From NCBI GenBank assembly GCA_015680685.1, contig MNCI01003473.1, positions 196,835 through 260,834 on the forward strand: a DNA stretch of 64,000 bases, in the 5' to 3' direction. Positions within the stretch are counted from its first letter, which is position 1; every line of letters starts with the position of its first letter. Below the pieces are notes generated by a model that was not told the origin of the DNA, searched no databases, and saw nothing but the letters and a program-made list of their open reading frames with translations. Below, piece by piece: positions 12,731 to 54,600 of the stretch. The stretch is from Gnetum montanum. Taxonomy: Eukaryota > Plantae > Gnetophyta. The position numbers were made by a program, and so were the translations under genes.

Positions 12731-13559
12731 AGATGTCTATATGAAGACATATTCTTTTGAAAAGAGATGTATCATGTTTTTGGGAGACATCTTCTTTGCA
12801 TGTACTCCACTTTGGCCAAGACATCTTCTACTTCATGGAGAAATCTTCTCAGCTTTTGAAATTTGGTTCCTTAGGCTTCCTCTTGCTAATTTATCTTCCT
12901 CTTGATTACTAAAGCATCTTCATCTGACTCGTAGCCTTCATTTATCCATGCTTATCCATGCTCCTTTGAGTTCTTATGATTTTCTCTTTGACATTCCTTT
13001 GTAGATCTCACTTCTTGAGTTTTCATTCATGCCCTAAAAAAACATCACATTCAACAACATTCTATGTTCTCTATTTTTCTTAAGGTTTTGACATACCAAA
13101 AGGTCAACAATCTTCCCCTTTTTAGTGATGTCCAAAACTTAAGAAAATGGGTGAGTCAATAAATTGATAAATAATAATAATAATTAATAAAAATATTAAG
13201 ATGTATAAATTCCAATGATAGCCAAGGTTAGTACTAAGATAATGACTCTAAAGTTCAAGGCTTAGGATAAAGATTACATGAAACTATACTACACAAAAAA
13301 TTATCTCCATAAAAAATGCATAAATATATAATCATGATAACCAACATTTGTCCATATCATAAACTGTTCATACAACTATCCACAAACTATCCATCAACAA
13401 ATTGTCCATACAAAATATCCATTGAAATATCCTTAACACATACAAGAACTACATATGTGAAAATCCTTACCAAAAACACATATGTATCAAACTATCTATA
13501 TACAAGTCCACATTAAAAACTCTATCCCCATTTTTGGACATCATCAAAAAGGAGGGATG

Positions 13560-17420: not shown

Positions 17421-20399
17421 AGCTCACTCTTGAAGTTGATGTTAAAAGAAAGAGTACTAGGCTCCAATATCATTTGAGGATCAAGAACTTAGAAGGGAGG
17501 GATGAATAAGTTCCCTAAAAGAAAATTAAACAACCACAAAAACCACACCCAAAATTTACATGGTTCCCCAAGTTGGGTACTCCACACTTGAAATGTAGAT
17601 CTCTTGCACACCTTCAAGATTTGTTTCTCTAAAATGTGGCTTGAAGAGTACCACACTTGAAGTGTTTTGTTGCTGTGAAACCACTCAACCCTATAAGGTT
17701 CCAACAAGCTTAGAATGTGGTTTCAAGGATCCCATAACTTTTACAAATTAAGCTTCACTCCAAAGTGTTTTGATGCTACACAATTACTCAATCTTGCAAG
17801 ATCCTGACAAGATCAATTATGATGCCTTCTCCCAAGAAGCACATTAACCCTAGTAGGGCAACAAGAGAGAAACAAAAATACAAGGAAAGAGTGTAACTCA
17901 AATTTATACATCCTTGTACGTTGAAGCACAATTCTATAATCAAGCAAATGATATAACAAATGAGGTACACAAGTATAACATACAATGATTTCTTAGATAG
18001 TGACAATACATGCACAACACTTGCACATTGCCCAAGAGTATGAATTCTTTTTATAGCTTTGGAGTTTTTGAAAACACCTCATAATTCATGCAACAACTAT
18101 CTAATGTCTAGTGTAGATTTCTGCTTTGAGATTGGGATGTCTCTCTAAAATTTGACTTCAATTCTAGGGATATGTCTCTTCTAAAAGTGGTACATCTTTG
18201 TGGAGATGTTTTCTTCTAATAGAAGACATCTCTTTTTCTTGGGAGATGTCTTATCGACATGTACTCCACTTTGGCCAAGATGTCTTTTGCTTCATGGAGA
18301 TGTCTTCTTAGCTTTTGAACTTTGATTCCTTAGGCTTCCTATTGTTGATTTAGCTTTCTCTCAATTATTAGAGCATCTTCATCTAACTAATAGCCTTCAT
18401 CTTTATCTATGCTTGTCCATGATCCCTTGAGTCCTTGTGGTCTCCTCTATGACTTCCCTTTGTAGATCTCACTTCTTGAGTTCTCATTCATGCCCTAGAA
18501 AATAATTACATTCCACAACATTCTATGTTATCCATTTTCCTTAAGGTTTTAACATACCAAAAGGTAAACATTGGTAGCATGGGTTGCCTTAACAACTTGT
18601 TCTTGGGGTTGTTGCTATGATTATTGATTATTCACTTCCACTATGAGGTCATTTCTCCTAGGGCTATGATGGCGCTCCTGCCTACAATCCTCACTTTGAT
18701 GCCATCTGCAATCACAAATATAATTCTAGATTAGTCATTTAGATATAATCTGGTTTAATTTGGATGCCTTCCACTATTTGATTAGGTTAAGTTTGTTGGT
18801 CCAAAGTTGGGATTTTATTGTTAACTTCTTATTTAGTGATTGCAGGCATATGATATTTTATTATTATTTTATTCATGCTTTAATGAAGGTTCATTGTTGA
18901 TATTAACTCTTAGAATTATTATTTTAATATCTTATCTATGGGATGTATAAAAAATTTTCAAAATTTGTTTTGTGAAAACCTAGCATTTAATGTCCCTAGG
19001 ATGTAAAGAGTANATTTTTAGGGAATTTGAAAGAGTTTAAGATTGAAAAAATAGCCAAATGAAAGCTAAAAGATTGGGTAAACATTACAACAACACAAGT
19101 GAAGTTTTTGTTTATGAATTAGAGCAATTTGATCATGCATAATAAGCAAATGGAAGATGTTTCTTAAGCCAAATTAGCATAAAACTTAGATGATGCAGGC
19201 TATTGAGATTGTAGAGATCAAAATGAGGCATATGGTTATATAAGTGGATTTTAAATTAGAGGAGACCAAGAGCTATATAAGTGGGTTCTTCCAAAAGTAG
19301 GCTTTTGCCTAAGATGCCCTTACATAATCTCATCTCAAGGAGTTCTTAGGCATTTTGGGTGATGAATGATTATTCAAGTTAAAAACTATACCCATGTGAG
19401 AGATTATTTAAGGATTATGTAAACTACAAAATAAAACTATTAATTGATCATGGTATAAGATAATGAGGTAAAAAAAAAAGAGATGCTAGTATGGTAGAAA
19501 GAGATCAAGAAAGGAAAATTTACATCATAGTCACATGGGATCCTTGGTGAAATGCTTGATTAAGATGATCCAATACTAGTTTGTTCTAAGTCTAGACCAA
19601 GTTCATACTAATAATAATAACCTCACATTGGTGTATTTCTCCTCTCCTACCATCATGAGTTGATGACAACCACAAAGAACAATTGTCACTCTAAGAAAAG
19701 AAAAAAATAGAAGAAGAAAGTAGTTAGGATGAAATTTGGTCATTAGTTAGAGGGATACCTTAAGGTATGGATAACATGTCTTTCTAGCCCAATAACTAGT
19801 GCTTGTATCCCAAGAGATCTTCAAAGAGGTGTGCTTTTAATTTCCATTTTTTTTCGTTTTCTGGGAACCAAATCATACAGGGACATACTACATTTTATGG
19901 TTAATAGTAGAAGTGATGATATGTCCATGAGGAGTCATAGAACTCAAGAGGGAAGTTAAGAAGAGAGCACAAAAAATCATCTTGAGGTCACATCCTTTTC
20001 CATTTTCACTAGGTTCTTTTCCAACTTGTTGGATAATAAGATCACATGTTGCATTTAGTTTTGATGACGTAAACTTACTACCTAATACCACTAGAAAACT
20101 GATAGCTCATTAGTAGAGAGCATAATTTAAAGAAAAAATTGACATATATAATGAGTTATAACCTTGATAGCTATATTCAACAATTACCAAAGTTCTTAAT
20201 AATAATGGAATAAAATTAGAGATTGTAATTAAAACCAAATGAAAGTAATAAGAAAAGCTCAAGTAAAACGTAGAGAGTTAAAAAGGAAAATATATAGAAT
20301 AATCATTAAAATATATAAAAAAGAAAAATATATAAAGAACTATGTAAAAAAAAAGAAGAAAAATATTTCATCCGCTTTAAGGTGTTATGGCAGATGGAT

Positions 20400-25521: not shown

Positions 25522-28500
25522 TGAGGATCAAGAACTTATAAGGGGGATTGAACAAGTTCCCCAATTAAAATACTGCAGCCACCAAAACACACACAAACTT
25601 TACATGGTTCCCCAACTTGGGTATGTTCGCACTGGAAGGGTAGAATCCATGCACACCTCTAGACTTATTTTTTCCAAAAATTTATTTAAAGTGAATCACA
25701 TCCTATATAATCTTTGAGCTTTTCTTTGAAGCATTTTTTTGTTGCAAAACGACCTAGTCCCCCAAGGTCTCAATAAGCTCGAAATATGATTTAGAGGATT
25801 CCACAACCTTTACAAAATTGAGCTTCCCATCAGAGTGTTTTGACATCTCAAAATCAATAAATCCTACAAGATCTTGACAATTTTGACAAATATTTCTTCT
25901 CTCAAGGAGCATATCAACCTTGCAGGGCTATAAAGAATAAAGAAAAGAAAGAAAGACACGGAGCGAGTGAAACTACACTTTACAAGTTCATTACATTTAA
26001 GCTCTCACAAAACAACATACAAATGATATACAATGAAGAACAAAAGCACTACATAATATGTATACAATAATAATCCAATTGTGTGAACAATGCTCACTAA
26101 TTCTCATGACTTCGTCTTTGTTTAATACTTTTCAAGATTTTGAAACTCCTTGAAATTTGTCCAACAACTAGATAACAACTTTATAAGATGTCTAATTCAA
26201 AGTGGAAATGTTTTTCTATCAAAATTATCAATTCTAAAATGAAATCTACCTATAATAACATCTACTTGTAGATGTCTACCCTTAGAAATCTACCTATAGA
26301 CGTTTTCCTATAGATGTCTATCTTCAATGATAAATGTTTGCTATTTTTCATAGATGTCTACTGTACTTTTGTACTTTGAAATCCAAGACATTCCCTTGTC
26401 AATTTGACATCATGTTAGTCTTCAAAACATCTTCATTTGACTTGTATACTCCTCTTCTATCTTAGTTTGTATCTTGTCATCCCAACATATCTCTTGTTTA
26501 AGTCATGGATATTCTTCCCATCTCAAAATAGCTCTCATTCTGACTCAGAATTTGCTCTTTGTCTCAATATAATGTCTTGATACATTAAAGCTCTTGATTG
26601 TGCTATTATCATGATCTCATCATGCTCTTGGTCTACCCTTATATTTTCAAGGTAATATAAACACATTTTGCACATTCTACATTTTCTAAGTTTTTGACAT
26701 ACCAAAAGGTCAACAATCTCCCCTTTTTTGGTGATGTTCAAAACTTGAGAAAATGGATGAGCATAATACCATAACATTATAACATTATATGATAAACAAT
26801 AAAAGCACAAACATTTATGTGTGTGTGTGTAGAAAAATATAATTTGTCTTCATTAATGCACTAAGAATATCATAAACTTGTCTCCAAAGATATATCATAA
26901 AAAGAGCAACATCATATAGTATGCAGGACTAATATCAAAAAACTCTCCTGCTTTTTGGATAGCATCCAAAATGAAGAGATCATAAAAAGTACCTATCTAA
27001 ACATCCTAAAAAAATTTCCATAAGATAAACTTTCATAACCTTATATGATAATCCCATAGAGATATAAATATTTAGCGAAGGAAGAAAATTAGTTAAAGAG
27101 TACACATCGTTTAGCATTGATTTCATAGAACTGATGATAAAAAAAATTTCATTTAGAGCTTCTCTTTATCTGTTCTTAAACAAAGTTAAAATTAATGAGG
27201 CACAAATAATCCAAGCCTTTCAATTGATATTCAAGAGTATTTAAAACCAAATGCTGAAGTCCAAAGTTTGGCCCTTGAAGATTAGGTAAACTATCTTTGA
27301 ACCAATAAGCCATTAGTAACAAATAACTAATATCTCATAGTTCTATAATCATCTAATATTTTCCCTCTTTTTAAACATCAACAAAAAGATAAGGCATAGT
27401 AATTCCATGAAAAGGAGAGTAAATACATGCAAGTTCAACTTTTAAGAACTAGATCAAATACTCACAAGAAAGATCAAAGCAATATAACTTCTCATGAAAA
27501 GTATTTCAAAATATCAAGAACAACCATACAGATCCTTAACAAGATGCTCATAAACATATGTCAATATGTCAAGTTCAAAAATACATCATCAAGAAAGTCA
27601 CTTTGAGGTAGAGATCCAAAATGTAATATGACCAAAATAAATCTCATACTTTTACCTTAGATACTTTATCAAGCTTAACATAAATATGTCTCTTACTCAC
27701 TCATTCTCTATTGTGGATGCTAGAGTAGGAGATGTTGCAACCTAAGTGCCTTTTGTTGAGAGTCTTTGAAGATTCCCCCTATGCTTGTGGTCCAAAAGAT
27801 ATAGGTTGTTGATAAGGTACAAGATCCCCTTGCATATGTGCAAATGTCCTTCTCATCTTAATGCTTTAGTAGTAGGGAGAGTGGTATTATTTCCTTGGTT
27901 CTTTTAGGATTATCTTTTTCCTTTCAAAGATGTAATCTTAATTATCCTTTTGTCATCAAAGTACTAGATCTACATTACATCACTAAGATCAAGTATAGAT
28001 ACTAAGGTCTTCCATTAGTTATATCTTTTAAAAATTTTCTTCTAGATAATTAGCAAGGAATCCCTTTTAAAAAGAAAGAACTATGTGATTAGACATTGAG
28101 GATCCAAAATTCATAATAGCAACTATAGTCTTCAACTTTTGTAATGTATCCATTTCTTAAACATCCATTCATTTCTTACTTTGCCCATATACCTCTTGAG
28201 ATAGACATTTGCTATCAAAATGGAACGTCTCAAAAGCAGATAAGACATTTAACTATTAGAGTAGACGTTTGACCTACTAGGGCTAAAAATAAAGATGCTC
28301 ATTTTGAGGTATGGAAGCTCTGGATATCTCCAAAAAAGTCCCCATAGCCCCTAGAACCTCCTATACTCATCAAAATAAGTCTAAAACACCATCAACCATG
28401 GTAAAACACCTTGAAATCATCATTACAAAAAATCAACACAATAAAACACATATAAACATCACACATACATTGAGAAGTACACAAAGATTGGGTGATGTCT

Positions 28501-31500
28501 TCATAAATCTAGAGTGCCATATTAAGATCAGGTTTGGAGACTTTTGAAAGCAAGGCCTTCCATTCCATTAGTAGTACCTTATGATAAAGATAGCAAATAA
28601 TTCATATGCTTAAGGGATTCCTTTTGAAATGTTTATTTTCTTAGAAGATACATGAATTACATTAAAGTTACCAATTCAAATGCTTCAATTACCATACAAG
28701 AAAAATTACACTTTATTATTTCACAAGAAAGCAACAATGCCATATCATAGCTTAATTAAGAGTATAGAACACAAGACATTTATGTTTAAACAACAATGAA
28801 TGTTTAATCAAAGGCTTTTAATCCATGAATTATAGTCAAGGGCTTTAAATCACTTGAAACCAATATATTCTAGTTAAGAATTCATAACATGATTTATTAG
28901 TAAAAACTTTAAAAGTAGTACAAGCAAGTTGTTATAGCATATTATAGTTCAAGATCAAGTGGAAATTTCTTTTCATTTGCAAATATTTTCAATAGCTTTC
29001 ATTCAACCATAAATATAAACTACTCTAGTCTAATCTCATCAAGCCAAGGAATAATGATTATAACTATACTTATCTTGCTTGTTGACAAATCAAGGTGTCT
29101 AAGGAGATTGGAACTGAGGTTCTCCTTTCAAAGTTCCTCCTTTCATACCAATTTTGTTTATTTCTAAGGTCTTGGTTTCTTTTACAAAATTGTTGAGAGT
29201 TCTTGCACTTCCTTCTTTTGCTTGATTCTTCACAGCTTTTTTTTCTCTTTACCCTTTTGATTTGTCCTCCATTCCTTTTTTCCTTGCATGATTTCCTTTC
29301 TAAGTGCATTTGGGTGAGATCAAGGACTCTTATGATATAACCAAGTGTTTTTAAATTTCAATTGCATTTCTTATGCCCAAATCTATTACAATAATAACAG
29401 CTAACCTTTCTATTGTGGTTAAATTGATCAAACCTTGGAGCTACTATTGGTTAGAATGTAGTACCTATTGATATTTCAATCTTTGAAGAAGCCTTTTGTT
29501 TGGATGAAGTTTGTGTAGATGCTTCTTCTTGTGGACAACATCCTAGTCCATTGTTATCATGTGGACTTCTTCCTTGTCCTAGAATGATGCAAAGGGATTC
29601 TTTTCCTTTGACAAGCCTGTCATTCACCAATTTAATATCTACAAGGTCTTTTTTCATTTGCTCACAAGACAAGGTTATTTTTTTGTTCTCAACCCTTAGG
29701 TTTGAGTTTTCTTGTAAAATTTCTAAATATTTTGCATTAAGTAGAGATAAATCTTGATATTTTTCTTTGACAACTTTTTTAGCTTTATACAAAGATTTTT
29801 GAAGGACAACAATTCATTGCAAAAAAGATCATATCTTTCCTCATCAATTTTACTTGGTCATCATTTTTCATTTTGTAGTTATCATAATCCATGAGAGCCA
29901 TGTAGATGATATGTGAGTTCATTGTAGTGTTATCTACCTCTTTCTCACTTTGTTCTCCATTGTCCTATCTAGTGTAGATATTTTTTGCCTTCTTATCTTC
30001 TTGAGCTTTATCATCAAATATTAGATCATTGATGGGTTCTTGATTAATCAAGCCTATGCATAATAGATTTGAATCTTCGAGTGTATTTCTTATTTCCTCT
30101 TTGACATCCCTACTTGTATAGATATTACTTCTTCTCCTTTCTTCACTATACTCTTTTTCTTGTAACTTGTAAGCATTGGGGCATTTAGAGTCATATGGCC
30201 TCTTCCTCCACGTATTTAGCATTCCATAGAAAAGGTATTAAAATTTAAAAGTTTAGACTGCTTACCTCTACTCTTACCTTTGGTGCTCAAAATGTTGCTA
30301 ATGAGTTGAGTACATCCATCCAAGTTGAATGCCCAAACTAAGAACCTTACATATTTAAATAACTCTTGCATTTGAGTTTTCCAACATGTAAAGGTGACCC
30401 CATTGAACATTTGTAAGTTGATTTATAATCCTTCTTCCATTGTTCACTCTTGAGTTGTTATTCTCAAAATCAAGAATATCGAGCTTTGATACCACTTGAG
30501 GATCAAGAACTTAAAAGGCGTGAGGGCGGGAGGAGGGGATGTGTATGTGTGTGTGTGTGTGTGTTGAAAAAATTTCCAAATTAAAATGCTATAGCCACCA
30601 AAATACACACAACATGGTTTTCAAACTTGGGTATGCCCACACTCAGAGGGTAGAATCTATGCATACCTCTAAACTTTGTTTCTTCATAAAGTGGTTTGAA
30701 GGACACCCCACCTTGTACAAGCTTTGAGCTTCACTCTAGAGTGTTTTGTCACTATAAAACCACTCAACCTTGAAAGGTCCTAGCATGCTCAAAATGTGGT
30801 TTAGAGGATCTCAAAACCTTCACAAAATTGAGCTCCTCCTTGAAGTATTTTGATGTCACAAAATCACTTAATCCCACAAGATCTTGACAAGCTCAACAAA
30901 GATCTTTTCTCACAAGAAGCACATCAACCCCATAGGGCTACAAAGAAAAAAGGAAAGAAAGAAAGAGAAGGAGAGAGTGTAACTACACTTTACAAGTTCC
31001 TTGCAATTAAGCTCTCACAAAACAACATAAAAATGATATACAATGAAGAACACAAGTGCTACACAAGATGCATATAATAATGATCCAATTGTGTGAATAG
31101 TGCTAAGTATCTCTCATGAGTTCCTCTTTGTTTGATACTCTTTGAGCTTTCAAAAACCCCTTGAAAATTTTCCAACAACTAGATAATGGCTACCTAAGAC
31201 ATATAATTTGAAGTGGAGATGTATTTTTATCAACACTGTTAATTATGTAATGAAATCTACCTGAAATGACATTTACTTATAGATGTCTATCCTTAGACGC
31301 CTACATGTAGATGGCTATCTTCAAAGATAGACATTTGTTGTTTGTCACAGATGTCTAGTCTACCTTTTCACTTTGGAATTTGAGGCATTCCCTTGTTAAT
31401 TTAACATATTGTTAGTTTTCAAACCATCTTCGTTTGGCTTGCAGAATCCTCTTGTATCCTAGCTCCTATCTTGTCATTCCAATGTAGCTTTCATTTTGAA

Positions 31501-31715
31501 GTCTTGGATCTTCTTATCATCTCAATGTAGCTCTATTTTTGACTCAAAATTTTCTCTTTATCCTAATCTAATGTCCTGATACATTAAAGCTCTTGATTGT
31601 GCTATTGTCCTGATCTCATCATGCTCTTTGTCTACCCTTAAGACTTGCAAGACAATACAAATACATTTTACACATTCTACATTTTCTAAATTTTTGATAT
31701 ACCAAAAGGTTAACA
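25522..31715 (-). mobile_element. Second Sirevirus-like pol-less element (LTRs 25522-26715 and 30497-31715)
   Basis: PBS TGGTATCAAAGCTC at 30481-30494 (minus). PPT at 26716-26730. Gag remnants 30410-29070 (MFNGVTFTCWKTQMQ, LGQGRSPHDNNGLG). Host gag resumes at 31716. TSD decayed (GGTCA/GCTAA, 3 of 5). Confidence 0.88.
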
Positions 31716-32719: not shown

Positions 32720-33607
32720 TGATGAGTAGTGGGAATTCCCTACATCCAATCATATGAATCAAAAGTGTGTATGTGAGATCTGGTCAAAATTTGTGAATCT
32801 CTTCTACCTAAGTGGCTTTTGTCCTAAATAGTCAGACATGAGGTTACTAGTCATTGTCTCTTTCCAGTCATCACTTGTGTTAATTTTGTCCATATGGCTA
32901 AGTGTGATTGAGGTGTCAGGTATTTGTATTTATAATTTTATAATTTTTTATCTTTAAAAGTATTGAGAGAAGAAGTAATTGAAATATTGAACTTTATCTT
33001 ATTAATAACTAAACTATTCTAAATGCAAACTATTCATTCCCATTTTTTCTACACATCATGAACTCATATTAATGCCATTGGATTACTAGGTGCTTACTGC
33101 TAGGTGAACCAAGTATTCATTGTTGGGATTACCAAGCATTAGTATATTATGCTTGAAGTGGTCATATTCACATTACTATGGAATAAAATACTAAATGCTT
33201 AAGTATAGAATAGTAAATTTCATGTAAAGTAAAATGTTTATAAGTAAACTAAATACTAATTCAAGTGCTGCAAGTGAGAGAATAATTCTCAATTTTATTT
33301 CTGTCATCCAACACTATACAGATACATCTTACACTCAAATAAAACTTTGTAGAATTTATTTAATCCATGCTATAAGCACTTAGAGAAAAATTTCGTTATG
33401 TCCTGTGGAAAAAACTACAATATCTTCACTAGGAGAATGATAAAAGGTGTCATAAATGTGGCTTGTACACACATTTATATAGACTTATGGAGGATCAACA
33501 TCAACACATATGCACCAATGCATCCAAGGATGTATCGATAGGAATGCATTGATGAGGCTATGTCAATAGGTATGCCTTGACATAACTAACTTATTTAGGC
33601 TTAATCA
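32720..33607 (-). repeat. 5' LTR of X1
   Basis: Homologous to 7579-8444. Followed on the minus strand by TTAGCATAATTGCCAACGA, consistent with a transition-decayed TTGGCGCCGTTGCCGGGGA PBS. Confidence 0.85.
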
Positions 33608-33777
33608 ACATTGTTCTCTACCTTTCCTTCTCTAAAAGATTGCCTAAGTTTGCAAAAGGTCTTTCAAAAATTCTACCAAAATTTTCCTTCTAAATTACCA
33701 GTTTTGACTTTTATAGATCCAAAATGTGACATCCTATCGCTGGATGTCATGGCAAAAGTCAAATATCTGATATATTA

Positions 33778-33881
33778 GACATTATGTGTATGAAGAAAAT
33801 ATACTAAATGTGAAATGTATTTGACATTTGACATTATTTGTATGAAGAAAATATACTAAATGTGAAATGTATGTGACATTT
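33778..33881. repeat. 52-bp tandem duplication in the 3' LTR of Z
   Basis: GACATTAT.TGTATGAAGAAAATATACTAAATGTGAAATGTAT.TGACATTT occurs twice. Single copy in the 5' LTR. Confidence 0.9.
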
Positions 33882-34773
33882 GACATTATGTATAAAGGAA
33901 ATAATAGGAAAAATGCAAAAAGAGAAAGAACAGAATGCTTTATTGATATGGAATAGTGTATCTAGATTATTCTTCAAGAGTGTTCCTTGGGGTTTTCTTC
34001 CTTTTGCATATATTCCTAAGAGGAAATCCATTACTACCACCATGGTTAGGCCTATAACCTGGCTAGAAGGGATGGCTAGTCCACTTCTTGTTCTGCTTCA
34101 CCTATCTTTCATGACCTGCCTATACTAGCTCTACCACTCCATGTTGGCACAACCTCTAAGCCTAGGTATAAATGCCTTAGGTCAAATCCCCAAAGGTTAC
34201 CTCAAGAGACACACCTATTATTACATGTCCTTTTGGGTCTTAATTACAATTGCCCTTTTAGGTCTTGTTACAATAACAATAACACTTGTTATGAAGAGAC
34301 ACCATCTTTGTTAGGAAACAAAATAATTTGGAAATGGGGACATGACAATCTACCCTCCTTAGGTTTTGTTCATCCTCAAACGATATCTTTTTCTAGCTCC
34401 AATACTTCTGTTATGCTTCCATGCTTGAATAATTTAATTTCTCCTTTGAACTTGAAGTTATTTCTTGCTTATTCTACAAATAAAATATATGTGAGAAGAA
34501 TTATATGGAAAATTAAATATTACTTTCTTAATACTTACTTCATTTTCTAAGATAATGACAAGAGATGAGTTAAAGATATACCAACCACCAATCACCAATC
34601 CTAACCAGGGTCACACAAAGTGCAACTCATTTCTGGTTACCCAAGTTAAGGTAGGGAAAATTCTTTATTCCCAACATGCATTACCTTATATATTTTACTT
34701 TTCTAATTAAAATATAAATTAAATAATTAAGAAAATAATAATATTATAAATAAAAGTAAAAGTAAGATATTTC

Positions 34774-35769
34774 TTAATCTTGATCAACCTTGTGAATTGA
34801 TGGAAATAATTGTAATTTTTCCATAAGTGATATATGATTAGAAGGTCTTATTCTAGATGGTAAGGCTTGATCTTGATTCTTCTCAACTTCTTCTTTAGAA
34901 ATTAACTCTAGTAACTTGATAACTTGGAAGAATTGGACATTGTACCAAATATAATCCAAAGTCTTAATGAATAATGGTGTTAATCCATCTTCATTAATCA
35001 TAGTAGAGAAATTACTAAATTGTGGTTATTAATGAGCAATATCTAGCAATGTCATCTATTTCTGAATTTTGGAATCTCATTTGTTTACTAAAGATTCAAA
35101 ATAAGTAGAATATGCACTAGCCAATGAAATTGTATGTTGAATTGATGGAAATATCTTCTTTAAATAAAGTTTATCTTCCAAAGATTCCTTTACACATCCA
35201 TATTTTAAGAATTGATAAACACTACTTCCAACTTTTTCATTGAAATCTCCACAAAGAATAAATGGAAATAGATCAATATAACTTAGGAATAACTTATTCT
35301 TCAAACTTTCCTCTATTTGTTTAATGAAGTATGCTCCTTCACATAGTTTAACATCTGAACATGTTGGTCTAACAATTAAATGTGTGTTAACCATGCATAC
35401 ACATCTTCCTAATAATTGGATTTTTAGAATTACTACCAAGGCTATATGATTTTTCTAAAATCTTAATTGTTCTTTCTTTTCCATCTCTTGAAGTTTTGGA
35501 ATTTCAAAAATCATATTCTCTAAAACCCATTCAAATCTTTGTACCAATTCAAACTTGGCATCTTTATAAAAGGTCCCACAACTATTCATGTTGTGATTTT
35601 TGCAATAGGCTAATCTATATGACTCAAAATAAGAATTTCCACATGAACCTTTTTGCTTATAAATACCTCTGTATCCCATATTTCCCAAGTCTAGTTGGAA
35701 TTGATATAGAAATTTCCATGGCAAGACTTCTTGTAAGCATAAGACATCAGCATCAAAACCTTCTAACTC
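34774..35769 (-). pseudogene. CCR4: Intronless CCR4/nocturnin-family deadenylase (EEP domain), 5' end hidden in an assembly gap
   Basis: One reading frame gives DADVLCLQEV, GYRGIYKQK, NSCGTF, VCMVNTHL, DVKL, ILCGDFN, LASAY, PQFSN, TLDYIWY, LLEL, ALPS..PSNHISL in CCR4 order. Five in-frame stops, no frameshift. Confidence 0.9.
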
Positions 35770-35770
35770 T

Positions 35771-36160
35771 NNNNNNNNNNNNNNNNNNNNNNNNNNNNNN
35801 NNNNNNNNNNNNNNNNNNNNNNNNNNNNNNNNNNNNNNNNNNNNNNNNNNNNNNNNNNNNNNNNNNNNNNNNNNNNNNNNNNNNNNNNNNNNNNNNNNNN
35901 NNNNNNNNNNNNNNNNNNNNNNNNNNNNNNNNNNNNNNNNNNNNNNNNNNNNNNNNNNNNNNNNNNNNNNNNNNNNNNNNNNNNNNNNNNNNNNNNNNNN
36001 NNNNNNNNNNNNNNNNNNNNNNNNNNNNNNNNNNNNNNNNNNNNNNNNNNNNNNNNNNNNNNNNNNNNNNNNNNNNNNNNNNNNNNNNNNNNNNNNNNNN
36101 NNNNNNNNNNNNNNNNNNNNNNNNNNNNNNNNNNNNNNNNNNNNNNNNNNNNNNNNNNNN
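35771..36160. other. Assembly gap (390 N)
   Basis: Run of N. Confidence 1.
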
Positions 36161-36759
36161 TTAAATTTATGATATCATTAAATTATTAGGTACCCAAATG
36201 ATAAATCTGAACTTACCATTGAATTCAGAAGGGCAAAAATGTTTGAAACATCTATTCATATGATGAAATTGGACATCATATGCTTGAGTTATGCTAAAAT
36301 CATAAACTTTGAGGCTTTCAATGCACTATATTTGGCAAAGGGTAAAAACTAAATTTTCAAGTTTTTTGGGACTAATCTAACTTCACCATTTGGTTTGGAA
36401 GATTGAAATTTGTAGGAAATCACACTTCATTTAGCAAAAAAGGCTTTTGAAATCAAAAGTTATGATAGGTTGAAGGCTTTTGGCATAAAAAACAAGACTT
36501 CCTAAGAGGTCATCCATCCTAGTTCTACTTCAAAACAAGTGTACTTAATGATCAAGTTTTTATTTCCATTGTTACAAAGGTACAAAATTTAAATTTTTAA
36601 AAATAGTTTTGCTCATTATTAATTTAAATTGATGATCTAATGATGGGAATTTTAAATTTTTTTTTTCAGTTGACAAGCATTTCAAAATTTCTATTAGTTG
36701 ATGGAAATTTTAAATTTTTCATCTACTAACACAGAATCTTTCCATTATGTGGTAGTAGG

Positions 36760-37960
36760 GACAATGACGATACCAGCCATGGTGGTGTGCTAGTGGCGGA
36801 GTCTAGGGAGGTAGTTGGTGATGTCAACAACCAGGCTAGGCAGGGATGTTCCAGCATTTCCTATTGCTGGTGGCTTTGCAAGGCTAGTGAAGGTAATGCT
36901 AAGTGATGTGGCCATTTTCTAGGGTCTCCCTAGGGCTTGTGTGGCCTTGCACTAGGCTTGCATGGTCCATCTCAATGTCTATGTAGCCCATTGACTAGGC
37001 CCACATGGCTCCTTTACTAGGCATGCATAGCCCTTCTAGTGGGCCTAAGTGGCCCTTTTTAGGGCTAGTGCAACCCATCATTGGGCTCATGCTACCCCTT
37101 TCTATGGTCCATGTGGCCTATCACTAGCTTGTGTGGCCTCAAGTAGGGCTTTCATGGCTTCTATCAACTCACATAGTTGAACAAGGTGGGCACGGTGCAT
37201 CCTTCCAAAAGAGGTGATGATTGATGCTATCAGGAGAGGCAATGATCTACAGCAAGGGAGGAGATGATCAATGACATGAGAGGCGATGACATGCAATATG
37301 GAAGGTGATGATTGGCGACATGAGACACGATGATCTATAATAGGGAAGGCAATGACTCACAACATAGGAGGTGATGATTTGTAGCATGGGAGGCGATGAT
37401 CAATGGTAGGGAAGGCAATGACTCGTAGTGCCATCGATGCCTATAGAGCATTGGGATAGGTAATGATCAATGGCACTAATAGAGAATAGGCAGCGTAGAA
37501 GGTAACTAAGGGTGGTCATGGTAGAGGATGGTGGTGGAATGTGCAATAATGCAGTGGAAAAATGTGCTATGGGTGGCACGAGAAAGTGGCAGCATGAAGG
37601 TTTTGGTCATTGGCCAAAAAGAAGGTGATGCATCATGGATGTCCATTGCTATTGGCTAGTGGCTTGTGTCCATTGATCCAGCTTGTAGATCCTATTATGG
37701 AAAGGTTGGCGATGGCCCACCATCATGGCACCATGGTGCTACATGCAGAGGTAGTTATGGTAGAAGGCATTAGGAGGTAGCATGTAGTGAGCTATTGTAA
37801 GATGTAGGTGGTAGTTGACAGAAGGTTGCACAAGGTGACAGAGGGTATGCCACTACTGGTCATTTTTTGGCCACAATGCTATGTTGCTAGGCTTGCTAGT
37901 CCTTGTTGCATGGTGTGACCAACCTTGATGCGGCTGGCAGCAGGGCTAGTCATGACCCTA
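36760..37960. repeat. GC-rich block with degenerate ~20-22-bp tandem repeats inside Z
   Basis: Recurring GTGGCC/GGGCT units at ~36900-37160 and GGAGG(C/T)GATGAT / GGCAATGA units at ~37210-37470. Confidence 0.6.
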
Positions 37961-40900
37961 ACTACTAGGATTATTTTTTACATTATTATTATTATTATTA
38001 TTTTTTATGACACATATATATTAAAATAAAACTAAATGAGGGGATCTTGGGTTCAAACCCCTAACCTCTTGGCTCTTTTAATATATATATAACTAACAAG
38101 GAATGGGGCTTGGATTTGAACCCATGATCTATTGTTTCAATTTTTTTAAGATAAAAAACTTTTTGGGATTGGGGTTGAACCTGCAACCTCCTACTTCTCA
38201 AAAATGTTCTTTTTTTAAAAAAAAGCTTTTTATTATTATTTTATTTCACCTTATTTTGATGGTTGACATGGTGGTTCAGCCAATGACAAGGTGAAAGTTC
38301 AGTGTCAGTAAATGACAATTTTAGGTTGATTCTTAACACTATAATTTTGACATTGTTTTTGAAAATAAGTTTGATCAAGATGAAATTTGTATCATTAGAA
38401 TCATCTCGATGAGTACTACCTATTGGACATAGTCTTAAGGTTTAAAAATGAAGTTGATTTTTCAAGAATTAAAAAGACAAAACTAGCCTATTTTGTTGAA
38501 TTGACATTTCCAGGCTAACATAGGTAACTTGAAATCTTCTAGATTACTTAGATAATGGCTTTCAACAAAAAAAGATCAATTCAAGTCATGGTTACTAACT
38601 TTCTTGAAAAAAATTTAACAATGATCTTAATCAATTAATAATTTTAGTATTAAGATGGGTAAGAGTTACCTATATTGGTGTATCATTTTCTTATCAACAT
38701 CTCTTGTAATTGATGAATCTTGATGAGGTGTGATCATATCTTCATTGGTTAATGATATCCATGAAAGAATGTTTTTGGTTGCTAGGCTCTAGATTCCCAA
38801 TCCATTATTCGTGAAATCAATGAAAAGGTATCATCGAACTTACATCATAGACATATGGTGCATTTGATAATGATTAACGACTTTCCCTATGTTGTGGCTT
38901 CAAGGTTCATCATCAGGTTCATGTTGTAGTTGGCCCATAGTTCTGAATAGCCCTTGGGTCATGGTTTTCTCTAATACCAATTGTGACATCCCATCCTTAG
39001 ATGTCATGCCAAATGTCAAATATATGATATATTAGACAGTATGCGTATGAAGAAAATAATCAAATATGAAATATATATGATATTTAACATTATGTATAAT
39101 GGAAATAATAAGAAAAATGTAAAAAGAGAAAGAAAAGAATGCTTTATTGATATGGAATAGTGTATCTGGATCATGCTCTAAGAGTGTTTCTTGGGATTTT
39201 CTTCCTTTGACATCTATCCCTTAAAGGCAATCCAACATTTCCACCATAGTTAGGCCTATAACTTGGCTAGGAGGGATGGATAATCCACTTTGTGACTTGC
39301 TTATATTGGATCTGCCACTCCATGCTAGCACAACCTCTAAGCCTGGGTATAACTGCATTAGGTCAAATCCCCAAAGGTTACCTCAAGAGACACATCTGTT
39401 ATTACAACATGCCCTTTCGAGTCTCAATTACAACTACACTTTCGAGTCTTTTTACAATAACAATAACACTTGTTATGAAGAGACACCATCTTTGTTAGGC
39501 AACAACATCATTTGGGAATGTGGACATGACACAAAACATAATTTTGTTCATACTAAAGGGTTGTGTAGGCTACTAGACATAATTAAGAATCCTATTTTCT
39601 TAGTTTTGACTTTTGCAACATGTTTTCTAGCATATTCTTCTAAATACCCTATGAACCAAAAATACATTGGGATAGATTTACACTGAGATTACATAAAGAA
39701 TAATTTTGAATAAAATAGAAGTGCCACAATATGGATTTTCTAAAATAAATTATAGAACTACTTTTACGCTTAATCCTTCCTTTAGAATTACAAATGAATG
39801 ACATGATTAGGGCTTTGAAAACTTTTTGTTCTACCCAATTCAAAATTAAAACCTAACCTTTCTATTTAGATTAGATACAAATTATTTTTTAAGGTGTTTC
39901 ATTAGCCTCCCTTTATTGATTTTTTAAGGTTAGACCAAGGAATATCAACAAAAAATGCTAAAACATCATTGCAATTCTACTATGCATACTTCCTCTTTCT
40001 ACCTAACCTCATAGATGTCAAATCATGTTGATGAAGGGAGCATGAATGGTTGAGTGTTGAGAACATCAAGAGAAATGATGAGATAGGTGAGGATTATGAT
40101 ATTTTAGTAAGGAAGTGTTACAAGACCTTGGCACATAGATATTTGGCCATAACATGATGTTGCAAACACGCATTCATGATACTTCTTTTTGTTTTTTGTT
40201 TTTAGATATAAGATCATAATGATTGGCTAGAAGTTTAACTATTAAAGATTACTAGTAGAAAAATGGTTACATTTGATAGATTCAACTTCCATTTGTAACA
40301 TTCATGATTCAACATTTATTATGTTTCAGGGTACTTCTCTCTCTCTCTCTCTCATGAGAGAAGGAAATCTTAGCCATGATTATTAACAAGCTTTAGCAGG
40401 TTCAAAGGACACTTTTATGAATGTTAGGTTTTAATTAGTTCAATACCTACATGTCAAAAATCTTACTACATGTAATTGTTATTGTAACATGTCATAAGAT
40501 CAATGATTCACATCATTTAGGTGAAATAGTAGCAAATGCTATACAAGAAAAGGAAAATTCCATGAGTATTAAACTCACTACAAGTGTGATCATGCGAAGT
40601 GACAAGAAGAAGAATGAAAAAGAGAAACTTTGGTTATCATGGTTAAACAACTTGATGAAGTAAGGTATTTCGAGGTCATGAGATAACTTAGTGTTCTAAT
40701 GAATAGTACCTTTGTAACATCTTCTGGCATAACTTGTTGACACAACTAGGAGAAAACCAACTAGCCACTTCAAAAGTACACATCTAATAAAAGAGAAAAG
40801 TAAACATAAGCATAGAATAAGTAATGTCTAAGCTAGGATACCTTCTTAAGGGTTTTGATATGGATAATAGTGAAAATTAGTAGGTTTTGATGCTCCACTA

Positions 40901-46372: not shown

Positions 46373-47480
46373 TATAGTCATGGAAAGAATCAAATACTGG
46401 AGAGTCAAAAAAATTTGTAACTAAAACAGTTTTACCCTAGACCTACATGGGCCTAAGAAGCAAGTCTAGGATGCCTTAGTCTCACAAGAAGCATTATCAC
46501 CTAAGGACTTATGGACTAGTAATGAATGTGATATGTACAAAAATAAAGAAAAAAAATATGTAAATATAACTGACTTACTATATCTAGTAGATATTTGGCA
46601 AGAAATAAAAAGAAAAATTTAAATGCAAGAACAATGGAAATAACTGAAAAATATTGTACACTTATATTAAAGCATGCAAAAAGTTTAGAGAGTATAGATA
46701 TGGTCACAAAGAGGCCTAAGAAATGCCAAATCCTTGGCCACATGGGGGAAGGCTTTAAGGTTGCTCTAATTACAAAGTTTCTCTAGATGTTGGTTGACTC
46801 TAGGGTTGATTTATTCTTGAAAATATTAGAAGAATTGTTTCACATGTGGAGCTTTTCTACCCTCCTCAAGATCCTTTTGTAAAGAATGTTGGCTTCAGGA
46901 TCCTCTTGTGAAAAGGAGCTATTTCAAGATACTCCTATGGAAAGAGGTTATTTTAGGCTATAGGTTTGTTATGAATTAATGTTTATGGTTGCCACAGCTA
47001 GTTCATGTTGTTTTATACTTTCTACTCTTTGAAAGATTTCTAAGTGCACCAAAATTCTCTCAAAATTCTATCAAAACCTCCCTTGAAGTGTTGATTTTGA
47101 CTTTTATAGATCCAAAATACACTATTGTTCATGTTGAGATAGTTGTATAAGCTATTGAGCATAATCAGGAATCTTGTTTTCTCAACATTAACTTTTGTAG
47201 CATGTTTTCCAACATATTCTTTAAAATACATTATGGACCAAACATATGCTAGAATATATTTATGTTGAGAGTTTTATGCCTTATGTTGAGATTACATTTG
47301 AAAGAATTTTAAATAGAATAGAAGTGCTACAACATGGGTTTTCTGAAAGGAATTACATGATCACTTTTACACTTGATCCTTACTTTAGAATTATAAATGA
47401 ATTACATGATCAAGACTTTGTAAAGTTTTTGGTCTACTTAATTTGAAATCAAAACTTGACCTTTCTATTCAAATTAGACT
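46373..47480 (-). repeat. 5' LTR of element Y (interrupted near its far end by X2)
   Basis: Colinear with the three pieces of the 3' LTR. Contains the empty target sites ATGTT (~47005) and CAAAA (~47113). Confidence 0.85.
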
Positions 47481-51612: not shown

Positions 51613-54600
51613 TGATGAACCCCAAATTATTTTAGTTTTTAACTTATTAAAGGCTTACTTTTTTATTGTTCATTGTTTTACCATATGAAATATTATCAAT
51701 TTTTTTAATAACTATTGATAAGTACTAATTTCTTTATTAATTCTTTCTTATCACAGGATACCGCTAGAGTCGATAAATATCGATAAGATATAAAACAACA
51801 TCATAAATTTCGATATTTTTTAAAGGAAACCATATTGATCTACATAGCTTATATTGATTTAAATTAATATCATTAGACCAAAACTACCTAGACCTTCCAG
51901 GAATGTAGATATCAATCCATATCGAAGCTAATATGCATATGGAGAATCGATAAAGATAGTAGTTGTGATATAGATTGATAATATTAGATAAGCAAACTAC
52001 ACCACAGAGAAAATGGAGATATCAATCCATACTATGGGCATGCCTAGAATCTATGATTGAAGGACATCAACAACACAATATAGTTCAATACAGTAGTATT
52101 AATCCTTATCGATTCCCTCGATGGAGATTGATATGTCTATTTTGTTAATTTTTCCTATTTATAATGTAAGCTACTCTAGTATAAAAGGGAGAGCATCACA
52201 CCCAATGAGGGGCCATCCAAGGGGCACCCAGGGAGAACCCAAGGGATTCAATACTTGAGGGGAATACCTAGAGTTGATACCCAAGAGAACCCATGTTAAG
52301 TTGAAATCATTTTTTCTTGAAGAATTGTTAATTGAGGATTTGTTGAGCCTTGTGGCAACTATAAACCATTGGAGTCCATTGTCAAGCAACCGAGCTATTG
52401 AGGTTGTTCTGTTGTGGAAATAGTAAGGTAGAATCATAGATTAGGTAAAGTCTCCCTTGTAATCCTCATAATCTATGCTTGTATTTATGATTTCAAGTTG
52501 ATTGAATCATTAATTTTCACTCTTGAACTTAAGATTAGAAGTTAGGATGAAGATTTATGATTTTACTTATGAGCAATAGTCATAAGTGTCAGATTTGATT
52601 GGATTTGATTCTAATTATTATTTCTCTTGATGATATTTTTTAAGTTTGAACTATTCCTTCATGGATACGAGTCGTGGATTAGTCACAAATGAGGTGAAAT
52701 CTCTACAATGAAGATAATAATGAAGGCAACTTAGCACCAAACTTTGGCTGGCTTGTCAATTTGGCATCATTGCTAGGGAGGTCAAAAAAGTCAATCTTCA
52801 TTAAGGATTTAGTATATTTTATTTTTATTTTTTAGATCTCTTTTCAAAATTTAATTGAATCTTTGAAAAAGATTTGCATTGTTTCCATTTCATTTCATTT
52901 TCTTTTGTTTCATAGTGGTAGAAATGGTCTCCCTTAATTATTTTTCTTGTAAGAATTAAAATAAAAAATTTAAAAATAAGAAAAAATCATAAACCCAATA
53001 ATCAGTTATAAAAAATTGCAATTAAGGTAGTAATTATATGAACAATTAAGTAAATTTGTAAATTTTTAGGATTAATTACTCATGAATGTGCTAGGAAAGG
53101 GTGTGCCTGTTAAATGATATCAAATAAGCAATAAAAAGTTCTAAAATGAATTTAACCTTATGGAAATACCACAAGTTATTAGAAACATACTTGAATTGAT
53201 TTGAAGTAACCTCAAGAGGAACAAGGACATCCTAGTTTACAAAATAGATTTCTATTTTGATTCCATTAACCACAAACATCCTTGAGAAACAAAGAATTTT
53301 AGTCAAATATAATATTATATAAAGTAAAAATAATTAAGGGAAAACCAATAGTCTACAAATTTTATCTTGAAAAATGTAGAGAGTAATAGGAAATTCTATT
53401 GTTAGTTTGGAGTATAAAGAATTTTGTAGTATCATGTCTAGAATGCAAGGGAGATGGACAACTCCCCCAACCTTAAGATAGCCTGTCTTAAACTCAAAAT
53501 ACAACTAAGGGTGAGCCTTATATTAATAACTAAATTACACATAATAAACTCTATTGTTTTTCAAACAATGTTTCTTAAGTACAAAGTTTAATAAGTCAAG
53601 GGGTCAAAATAGCTAAGTTTAGGCTAATGATTATAAGTGTATAGTTTCTATTAATTACCTACTTGGATAAGTTAATAAGGTGGAAAGGGTGTGTTATGTT
53701 GGGACTAGCCTCTGTGGTGGTAAAGACATCTAACAATATAAAGCAAGATCAACACCCATGTGAGTAACCCATAAAAAATGAATTTGGCTTCCACAAGAAC
53801 CTCATGATTGAAGGTGGTCAAATATAGATATTCTTGAAAAAAAAATAGAAAAGATAAAAAAAAAATGAAAAATAGAAAATTTTTAATGAAAAAAAAAGTA
53901 ATATTGCAAAAAAAAGAAAAAATGAAGAAAAAAATGGCTCCACAAAAACCTTCAATCATGAGCATAGCCACACTCCCACAAATGCCTTATAGTTGGGGTG
54001 ATGCTCAAAACTCATAATTTTAAGCATCCCACAAGAACCACCTTTTGTGAGCTAAGTGATTAAGGGTGGAGTAGTGATCACCAATAAAACAAGAATGTCA
54101 TCACTTTAGAGCTAGGATATAACATGGGAAGTAAAGGATTGACTCATCTAAAGTAAGTATCTTAATGGATACCCTTACTTCTAATCATTCCCATTACTTA
54201 GCTTATTTAGTCCCTTAACTTGTGCTACTTCATACCTAAAGGATTGTTGTTTTTTAGGTTTTCTTTTCCATTTCACTTTTCCATTTTTCATTATCCCTCC
54301 ATTATTTTATCCAAGCTACCAACTATTGTGTTCACTGGTAATTAAAACCCTTTAATCCTTCAATTGATTCCCAAAATGTTTTCCATACGTGTTAGCAGTT
54401 GAGATCCCTACTATGGTTAAGCACAATGGATACTAATGATTGGAAGATCAAAGGTTACTTTTGTCTCATGTATAGGGGAGCATATATAAAACCCATGGCA
54501 TTGTTGTTTTTGGTTTGTTCTCCTAAGTAGTCTTTGGTCTAATCTCAATATTATTTAACTAATTAACCTAGATATGGGACATATCCTAATTTAATTAGGG

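What the first reader, a model, noticed from the sequence alone, without database searches (positions are those of the whole stretch)
33725..39531. LTR retroelement whose only recognisable cargo is a CCR4-family deadenylase
Seen: complete cis structure (two LTRs, iMet PBS, PPT, perfect CAAAA TSD, empty site in the host's sister LTR), so the unit integrated by retrotransposition. No gag-pol motif is recognisable. An intronless CCR4-like EEP coding sequence lies in sense orientation ~430 bp upstream of the 3' LTR, with no poly(A) remnant visible. Established: CCR4 is the EEP-family deadenylase of CCR4-NOT, host plant CCR4 genes have introns, and LTR elements can capture mRNAs. Inference: either an LTR-mediated retrocopy or a mobile family encoding its own RNA-decay enzyme. 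Such an enzyme could trim poly(A) or 3' ends, or interfere with host turnover of transposon RNA. Alternatively the element could yield siRNAs against host CCR4. I know of no described plant LTR family with this cargo but cannot search to confirm.
Basis: partly seen in the sequence, partly recalled or inferred. Interest (0 to 1): 0.92.

Follow-up and report, generated by a model that had tools for sequence, protein, structure and literature searches.

The report
Abundant LTR retroelement family carrying CCR4-like gene
This is a dead, old copy of a very abundant plant LTR retrotransposon family that has no gag-pol and instead carries a highly diverged, intronless CCR4-type deadenylase reading frame, which stayed open until about the time this copy inserted.

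Summary
The element lies on the minus strand at 33725-39531. It has two LTRs (86.5% identical), a CAAAA target-site duplication, an empty site at 47113-47117, an initiator-Met-like PBS, a PPT and no gag-pol. A CCR4-type EEP frame (34777-35769) ends 426 bp before the 3' LTR.

New findings:
- **This copy is dead.** It has five in-frame stops and SDH changed to SNH. The frame runs open into the assembly gap, and nothing recognisable resumes beyond it.
- **It is not a one-off retrocopy.** Contigs from DNA runs of three coded species cover the LTR ends, the leader and the EEP frame at depths of 10^4-10^5. The central ~1.7 kb is low-copy.
- **The frame was coding until about integration.** It has 5 stops, against 21-35 in the other five frames and 3.4 expected from decay since insertion.
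- **It is far from host CCR4.** Identity to gymnosperm CCR4 is about 30%. It groups weakly with unnamed intronless CCR4-like proteins known only from raw contigs.

Enzyme function and any benefit to the element are not shown. The scan's first stage noted the same kind of element on at least a dozen other pieces of this genome.

The parts
33720..33724 (.). Left copy of the 5-bp target-site duplication CAAAA
   Evidence: Sequence. A single CAAAA sits at the empty site 47113-47117.
33725..34347 (-). 3' LTR (element read on the minus strand). It carries a 52-bp tandem duplication at 33774-33903 that the other LTR lacks.
   Evidence: 86.5% identity to 38982-39531, TG..CA ends.
34348..34360 (-). Polypurine tract next to the 3' LTR (minus strand AAGGAGGGTAGAT)
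   Evidence: Read.
34361..34773 (-). AT-rich untranslated stretch between the EEP stop and the PPT. With the PPT it makes 426 bp from the stop to the LTR. No poly(A) run.
   Evidence: It is highly repeated in reads. Family contigs listed there carry gaps (table 8).
34774..35769 (-). CCR4-type EEP reading frame: 331 codons plus the terminal stop, five internal stops, running open into the gap. Motifs LCLQEV, NTHL, CGDFN and LDYIW are kept. SDH reads SNH.
   Evidence: 180 bits, profile positions 259-548 of 550.
35771..36160 (.). Assembly gap of estimated length. It hides at least the first ~39 residues of the EEP domain.
   Evidence: No listed contig bridges it.
36161..36660 (.). Moderately repeated stretch of unknown nature, with no significant CCR4 similarity in the sense orientation. 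Family contigs leave this copy at 36300 and 36529.
   Evidence: depth 2-13 thousand; loose ends; only a weak plus-strand match, E=1.
36661..38300 (.). Low-copy insert or private segment. It includes a GC-rich block at 36750-37960 with a 22-bp-period tandem array at 37232-37421.
   Evidence: (depth 5-700, single-copy contigs).
38301..38967 (-). Leader downstream of the PBS. It is highly repeated near the PBS and less so further inward.
   Evidence: depth table. No Pfam match.
38968..38979 (-). Primer-binding site, minus strand TGGTATTAGAGA, 2 nt after the 5' LTR
   Evidence: Read. The comparison with the initiator-Met PBS is from my own knowledge.
38982..39531 (-). 5' LTR
   Evidence: In reads, many contigs end at 38982 with unrelated continuations, as expected for an LTR terminus (table 7).
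39532..39536 (.). Right copy of the target-site duplication CAAAA
47113..47117 (.). Empty site in a sister copy of the host repeat

Best explanation
This is one old, inactivated member of a very abundant non-autonomous LTR retrotransposon family.

The family has LTRs, an initiator-Met-type PBS, a PPT and 5-bp target duplications. It has no gag-pol, so it must be copied and integrated in trans by the proteins of an autonomous LTR element (inferred).

In place of gag-pol, the conserved body of the family carries an intronless, plant-type CCR4 deadenylase coding sequence. It runs in sense orientation and keeps the native C-terminus and stop. It most likely entered the element lineage once as processed mRNA, through co-packaging and template switching (inferred).

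That frame diverged to about 30% identity from canonical CCR4 while staying open. It was still open at about the time this copy integrated (LTR K2P 0.15).

Since then this copy has decayed. It gained five stops, changed SDH to SNH and drifted towards AT. Its 5' part is disrupted by an unread gap and about 1.7 kb of low-copy DNA.
For: 1. Integration as one unit: LTR pair, TSD and empty site.
2. No gag-pol.
3. CCR4 identity: the best solved relatives are ANGEL2, yeast Ccr4, PDE12 and CNOT6/6L. The frame scores 180 bits and is colinear with a streptophyte CCR4 profile to its last residues. The catalytic motifs are aligned.
4. Family membership of the cargo: 35-40 thousand contigs per run, from three coded species, lie on the stretch. 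Summed depth is 1.7-6.4x10^4 (run X1) over the frame, against 4.8x10^4 on the LTR end and 3x10^4 on the leader. It is only 5-700 over 36660-38300. 31-mers of the cargo stretch occur in DNA runs of seven coded organisms.
5. Open until integration: 5 stops in frame against 21-35 in the other five frames. Shuffles give 29 +/- 5, and none of 5000 reached 5 or fewer. Decay at half the LTR distance predicts 3.4 new stops, and P(5 or more) = 0.26.
6. Long prior divergence: about 30% identity to Araucaria and Ginkgo CCR4, which are 77-92% identical to each other and to Chara over the same columns. The end branch is 2.5 changes per site.
7. Indel pattern: listed family contigs over the frame mostly align without gaps at about 17% difference, while those over the 3' untranslated part all have gaps (table 8; Fisher 0.004; the listing is selective).
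Against: - No second copy could be read letter by letter, so there is no dN/dS and no proof that any copy has a whole frame.
- I could not see whether the five stops are private to this copy. Only 40 of 732 differing places were listed.
- The N-terminus, start codon and continuity across the gap are unknown.
- Depth from contigs is not a copy number.
- A burst soon after capture of an already diverged host paralog would give the same picture without any selection inside the element.
- RNA support is weak. 481 reads out of 12.6 million records were laid, mostly under 90% alike and only partly on the stretch.
Confidence: 0.7

Rival explanations
1. Passenger cargo. A host CCR4-like paralog that was already diverged and intronless, or a retrogene, was captured shortly before one large amplification burst. 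The frame looks intact at integration only because there was no time to decay. The protein never mattered to the element.
For: Copies differ from this one by about 15-20% (table 8). That is roughly what independent decay after a single burst of the age given by the LTRs (K2P 0.15) would produce. Unnamed intronless CCR4-like proteins exist elsewhere and could represent such paralogs.
Against: Among 1.84 billion representative proteins, nothing is closer than 37% identity to the cargo. Listed family contigs over the frame avoid gaps while those over the untranslated part do not. Maintenance of an element body this size with no function is possible but not required.
Confidence: 0.25
2. One-off event. 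A processed CCR4 pseudogene landed in this particular element, either as a later LINE-mediated insertion or as a private retrocopy.
For: The sequence is intronless and this copy is broken.
Against: The stretch is repeated about as heavily as the LTR and leader in three species. There is no poly(A) and no duplication of its own. No LINE RT lies nearby.
Confidence: 0.02
3. Assembly artefact. The scaffold join across 35771-36160 is wrong, and the two LTRs with the cargo do not belong to one element.
For: No listed contig bridges the gap. Nothing CCR4-like resumes in sense beyond it. Depth drops about tenfold across it.
Against: The outer flanks of the two LTRs are adjacent in a sister repeat and share exactly the 5-bp duplication. 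The LTRs are in direct orientation, and the PBS and PPT are on the correct inner sides.
Confidence: 0.03

Closest known systems
Bs1 of maize and other gene-capturing LTR retrotransposons (reviewed in PMC13317346)
   Same: An LTR element without its own reverse transcriptase or integrase carries host-derived coding sequence in sense orientation between the LTRs. Acquisition is by transduction or template switching.
   Different: According to that review, Bs1 carries fragments of three genes, none with a full-length frame. That Bs1 is a low-copy element is from my own knowledge. Here, at least the C-terminal ~290 residues of one enzyme domain are carried, up to the native stop. The cargo is as repeated as the LTRs across several species and is only ~30% identical to the host-type gene.
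Non-autonomous LTR elements (LARD / TRIM type, e.g. Veju; PMC13317346 and my own knowledge)
   Same: LTRs, PBS, PPT and 5-bp duplication with no gag-pol, so mobilisation in trans is implied. High copy number is possible.
   Different: Their internal domains are regarded as non-coding. Here the conserved internal domain is a recognisable enzyme frame that kept its reading frame.
Canonical streptophyte CCR4 (carbon catabolite repressor protein 4 homolog 1/2; P0289 Araucaria, P0209 Ginkgo, P0227 Brassica)
   Same: EEP fold motifs in the same order. The frame is colinear to the C-terminus and shares the LLEL...ALPS tail.
   Different: 30-32% identity, against 77-92% among canonical members. There is no intron in the 993 nt read. 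The zf-C6H2 N-terminal domain is not seen (gap). The frame lacks the insertion before NTH that canonical members share.
Unnamed intronless CCR4-like proteins P0002, P0003, P0182-P0186, P0001 (Logan, JGI and ENA contigs only)
   Same: These are the nearest relatives: 34-38% identity, grouped with the window in the careful tree at 94/89 support, with shared deletions and tail motifs. Each is called as a single open frame on raw contigs. Clusters contain many near-identical whole and broken members, some apparently on the same contig (inferred from matching contig lengths). P0182 keeps a degenerate zf-C6H2.
   Different: They are only distant relatives. Their organisms and genomic context are unknown because the tool to fetch them was closed. 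Whether LTRs flank them is untested.
Retrotransposons that acquired host enzymes, e.g. DNA methyltransferases in Symbiodinium and Klebsormidium (PMC5890265)
   Same: A retroelement lineage carries and amplifies a host-derived enzyme gene.
   Different: The enzyme class is different and those elements are autonomous. Function for the element is likewise inferred there.
APE-type EEP endonuclease of LINEs
   Same: Same superfamily (Pfam PF03372).
   Different: The best solved relatives here are deadenylase-type (ANGEL2, Ccr4, PDE12, CNOT6L), not APE. There is no RT next to it, and the element has LTRs and an integrase-type duplication.

Membership tests
LTR retrotransposon (structural definition) | Two direct LTRs with TG..CA ends | tested here: met
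   33725-34347 and 38982-39531, 86.5% identical.
LTR retrotransposon (structural definition) | Target-site duplication and an empty site | tested here: met
   CAAAA on both sides, and a single CAAAA at 47113-47117 in a sister repeat.
LTR retrotransposon (structural definition) | PBS after the 5' LTR and PPT before the 3' LTR | tested here: met
   TGGTATTAGAGA at 38968-38979 (minus) and AAGGAGGGTAGAT at 34348-34360 (minus). The tRNA assignment rests on my own knowledge.
Autonomous Ty1/copia or Ty3/gypsy element | gag, protease, RT, RNase H and integrase domains | tested here: not met
   No such Pfam match in 20 stop-free segments of 40 aa or more on both strands. The gap (390 N) is too short to hold them.
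CCR4-type EEP deadenylase | EEP domain with the conserved motifs in order (LQE, NTH, GDFN, DY, SDH) | tested here: inconclusive
   Four motifs are kept. SDH reads SNH, and the first motif (SYN) lies in the unread gap. There are five stops.
CCR4-type EEP deadenylase | Closer to CCR4/Angel/nocturnin/PDE12 than to other EEP branches | tested here: met
   The top solved relatives are all of that branch. 180 bits to the CCR4 profile.
CCR4-type EEP deadenylase | Poly(A) 3'-5' exonuclease activity; association with CCR4-NOT | not testable with these tools
Canonical streptophyte CCR4 clade | Falls inside the clade of land-plant and charophyte CCR4 | tested here: inconclusive
   The best tree places it outside, with the unnamed intronless group (94/89). 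Forcing it together with the canonical clade costs 4.8 log-likelihood units, AU p = 0.065.
Processed (mRNA-derived) copy | No introns | tested here: met
   290 profile positions are colinear in 993 nt. That host CCR4 genes have introns is established knowledge and was not checked here.
Processed (mRNA-derived) copy inserted by LINE machinery | Poly(A) tail and its own target duplication | tested here: not met
   No A-run after the stop and no flanking direct repeat.
Repeat family (multi-copy) | The cargo stretch is repeated together with the LTR | tested here: met
   depth table and contig counts in three species. One search shows 31-mers of the stretch in seven coded organisms.

The most novel reading that the evidence does not exclude
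A highly successful non-autonomous LTR retrotransposon lineage keeps and uses its own CCR4-type 3' exonuclease. The enzyme might trim poly(A) or 3' ends of its own or its helper's RNA to favour packaging over translation. Alternatively it might interfere with host CCR4-NOT-dependent turnover or silencing of transposon RNA. The unnamed intronless, multi-copy CCR4-like proteins seen only in raw contigs of other organisms would then be the same invention elsewhere.
Probability: 0.22. Interest if true: 0.9.

Novelty: new variant of a known kind. Interest (0 to 1): 0.66.

Why it matters
Gene capture by plant LTR elements is known, but it usually gives low-copy chimeras of gene fragments. Here the captured sequence is an RNA-decay enzyme domain that forms the conserved body of one of the abundant repeats of a large genome. 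It kept an open frame through very deep divergence.

Deadenylation is a known control point for retrotransposon RNA. The library holds papers on CCR4-NOT repressing retroelements (PMC13392606) and on a plant copia element shielding its tail from deadenylation (PMC12501189). A retroelement that carries its own deadenylase would therefore be a new kind of element-host interaction.

Even as a passenger, tens of thousands of CCR4-like fragments are a large potential source of small RNAs with homology to an essential host pathway. They are also a trap for gene annotation.

Tried and rejected
**Fetching other copies.** None of these routes gave a second copy.
- A protein-pattern scan and a degenerate DNA pattern in metagenome contigs and a viral-contig scan found nothing.
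- The search for homologous proteins with the 125-aa piece found nothing.
The contigs of the nearest protein relatives could therefore not be inspected for LTRs.

**N-terminus beyond the gap.**
- The minus-strand segment 36170-36325 looked by eye like the start of the EEP domain, but it gets no profile hit.
- The only hit there is on the plus strand (36182-36349, E=1). It has no nucleotide similarity to the frame in either orientation, so I treat it as chance.

**Other RNA or protein features.** tRNA and Rfam scans of 33000-40500 gave no tRNA, no 5S and only a sub-threshold miRNA match. Pfam gave only chance-level matches for internal segments.

**Expression.** Oligo-dT RNA reads of the same species label give 481 mostly partial matches under 90% identity. 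There is no evidence that this copy is transcribed.

**Phylogeny.** The all-rows tree left the window unresolved on a 3.7 changes/site branch. The EEP-only careful tree and AU test favour, but do not prove, placement outside canonical CCR4.

**Private stops.** Whether the five stops are private to this copy could not be read. Only the best-supported 40 of 732 differing places are listed, and none falls on a stop.

**Literature.** Six searches found no plant LTR family with CCR4/EEP cargo.

Full report
**1. The element**

Direct repeats at 33725-34347 and 38982-39531 are 86.5% identical over 547 aligned bases. The Kimura distance is 0.151, with 50 transitions, 24 transversions and 3 indel events, one of them a 52-bp tandem duplication private to the left LTR. 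Both start TG and end CA. CAAAA precedes the left LTR (33720-33724) and follows the right one (39532-39536).

The outer flanks belong to a host repeat that has another copy in the window. 33611-33724 matches 47008-47117 and 39532-39875 matches 47113-47478. The two matches overlap by exactly the five bases CAAAA at 47113-47117. That is an empty site. It also ties the two sides of the assembly gap to one integration event.

The polarity is minus. The reverse complement of 38968-38979 reads TGGTATTAGAGA two bases after the LTR. This is 10 of 12 to the initiator-Met primer site as I know it, and one mismatch is a C-to-T change. The reverse complement of 34348-34360 is a purine tract abutting the other LTR. 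So 38982-39531 is the 5' LTR and 33725-34347 is the 3' LTR.

With a rate of 2.2e-9 per site per year, the LTR distance would mean about 34 million years. With 1.3e-8 it would mean about 6 million years. The organism is coded, so I leave the age conditional.

**2. No gag-pol**

The window has no open frame over 136 aa apart from one that runs through the Ns. Twenty stop-free internal segments of 40 aa or more, on both strands, gave no retroelement domain in Pfam. The 390-N gap cannot hide gag-pol. The element is non-autonomous.

**3. The cargo**

On the minus strand, 35769 down to 34777 is one frame of 331 codons with five internal stops (35455-7, 35077-9, 35056-8, 35029-31, 35026-8) and a terminal stop at 34774-6, 426 bp before the 3' LTR.

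- Its 125-aa middle piece finds ANGEL2 (1e-10), yeast Ccr4, PDE12, CNOT6/6L and nocturnin among solved structures, and no APE-type nuclease.
- Read through with X at the stops, inside a script, it scores 180 bits against a profile of streptophyte CCR4 and its nearest relatives. It is colinear with profile positions 259-548 of 550, that is, to the natural C-terminus. There is no intron in this part and no frameshift.
- LCLQEV, NTHL, CGDFN and LDYIW are in place. SDH reads SNH, and DG before CATF reads NS.
- There is no A-run after the stop.

**4. The gap (asked to be tested first)**

The frame is still open where it meets the Ns at 35770. About 39 residues of the EEP domain (profile 220-258), everything N-terminal to it and the start codon are unread.

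Beyond the gap nothing CCR4-like resumes in sense. The profile finds only a weak plus-strand match at 36182-36349 (E=1). That match has no nucleotide similarity to the frame in either orientation. No listed contig joins the two sides.

Continuity is therefore supported at the level of the element, by the duplication, empty site and LTR polarity. It is not established at the level of the reading frame.

**5. It is a family, and the cargo belongs to it**

31-mers of 34348-35770 occur in DNA runs labelled as seven coded organisms from seven studies.

I laid contigs from three of them at 80% likeness or more. 35-40 thousand contigs per run lie on 34200-39100. Summed word depth in run X1 is:

| Region | Depth (X1) |
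|---|---|
| LTR end | 48 thousand |
| 3' untranslated part | 23-35 thousand |
| Bins covering the frame (34692-35839) | 11-64 thousand |
| Leader next to the PBS and the other LTR | 30 thousand |
| 36168-36660 | 2-8 thousand |
| 36660-38300 | 5-700 |

Runs X6 and X10 behave the same way. Internal depth at about half the LTR depth is what two LTRs per body would give.

Listed family contigs differ from this copy by about 15-20%. Contigs ending at 38982 continue into unrelated sequence, as expected at an LTR terminus.

The low-depth centre is covered by single-copy contigs. One in X1 has 1 difference in 640 bases and one in X6 has 11 differences in 809. The locus itself is therefore in species A, and a 98.6% identical counterpart is in species B.

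Depth from contigs is not a copy number. Even so, thousands of distinct variants must exist. This rules out a private retrocopy or a later LINE-type insertion.

The scan's first stage noted the same kind of element on at least a dozen other pieces of this genome. I used those notes only as a lead.

**6. Was the frame coding?**

- The frame has 5 stops. The other five frames of the same DNA have 21-35. Shuffles give 29 +/- 5, and none of 5000 reached 5 or fewer.
- Using the substitution spectrum of the LTR pair, 4.6% of substitutions in this frame create a stop. At half the LTR distance that predicts 3.4 new stops, and five or more then has probability 0.26. The frame was therefore open at about the time of integration.
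- The differences between this copy and the family majority are dominated by places where this copy has A or T and the family has G or C. This fits deamination decay after insertion, and could account for the Asp-to-Asn changes.
- Among the contigs listed, 9 of 13 over the frame align without any gap, while all 7 over the 3' untranslated part have gaps (one-sided Fisher 0.004). This is suggestive only, because the listing is selective and the untranslated part is AT-rich.

**7. How far from host CCR4?**

Every protein in a library of 1.84 billion representatives was scored against the middle piece. The best match is 37% identity and 55 bits.

Over the columns of the frame, Araucaria CCR4 is 92% identical to Ginkgo, 83% to Physcomitrium and 77% to Chara. 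The cargo is 30% identical to Araucaria.

The nearest relatives (34-38%) are unnamed proteins known only from Logan, JGI and ENA contigs:
- They carry no NCBI or UniRef name.
- Each is called as a single open frame.
- One has a degenerate zf-C6H2.

In the careful EEP-only tree the cargo joins them (94/89). Together they are sister (92/92) to the canonical streptophyte clade (100/98). The cargo's end branch is 2.5 changes per site. Forcing the cargo together with the canonical clade costs 4.8 log-likelihood units, AU p = 0.065, so that placement is not rejected.

Post-insertion decay at about 7.5% of sites cannot explain about 70% amino-acid difference. Most of the divergence happened earlier, with the frame kept open.

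**8. Mechanism**

- Shown: the unit integrated with an integrase-type 5-bp duplication. It has the cis signals for tRNA-primed reverse transcription. It lacks the proteins. Its conserved body is the CCR4-like frame.
- Inferred: it is mobilised in trans by an autonomous element. The cargo came from processed mRNA, because it is intronless and keeps the native C-terminus and stop. Co-packaging and template switching is the route described for plant LTR elements (PMC13317346). The frame was maintained for a long time before this copy died.
- Not shown: that the protein is made, is a deadenylase, or helps the element.
- The main rival is a passenger captured shortly before one burst.

**9. Novelty**

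Six literature searches found no LTR family with CCR4 or EEP cargo. The closest known things are Bs1-type gene capture and non-coding LARD/TRIM elements. By analogy, retrotransposons that acquired DNA methyltransferases are also close (PMC5890265). I rate this a new variant of a known kind. It is of real interest because of the cargo's nature, its abundance and the evidence that the frame was kept.

**10. Limits**

- Read laying allows one call, and only part of its tables is shown.
- I built no consensus and no repaired frame. The broken frame was read through only with X at the stops, inside scripts.

Noticed in passing
window 36750-37960: A GC-rich block (45-52% GC against 25-30% around it) sits inside the element. 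It is low-copy in reads of three species and contains a tandem array with 22-bp period (66-bp by TRF) at 37232-37424. It looks like a later insertion or a private captured piece. No Pfam match.
   Followed up: partly
window 38025-38200: Three short pieces resemble tRNA T-arms (GGTTCAAACCC-like), two of them forming an imperfect inverted repeat. ARAGORN and Rfam find no tRNA or SINE.
   Followed up: partly
window 36182-36349 (+): A plus-strand translation resembles the CCR4 profile at positions 247-288 (contains DIICL). It lies directly beside the gap but is antisense to the cargo. E=1, with no nucleotide similarity to the cargo. It is probably chance, but an inverted diverged fragment cannot be excluded.
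   Followed up: yes
window 33774-33903: A 52-bp unit is repeated 2.5 times in the 3' LTR only. The 5' LTR has one copy, so the duplication arose after integration.
   Followed up: yes
window 11313-13109 / 17088-18570; 25602-26641 / 30612-31640; 51744-52640 / 55814-56691: Three further pairs of long direct repeats (72-89% identical, 4-5.8 kb apart) are probably other old LTR elements. The whole 64 kb has no intact open frame over 136 aa.
   Followed up: no
window 7311-8384, 32720-33724 + 39532-39875, 46742-47478: Three copies of the host repeat into which the element inserted (72-82% identical). Only the middle one is interrupted.
   Followed up: partly
None has an NCBI name. The pattern is what a transposon-borne gene would give, but the context could not be fetched.
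   Followed up: partly
window 35184-35347: Oligo-dT RNA reads of the same species label pile up here (depth 25-30). They carry indels against this copy and have sharply agreeing unrelated continuations at 35192 and 35231. A transcript from elsewhere appears to contain a short, diverged piece of the family.
   Followed up: no
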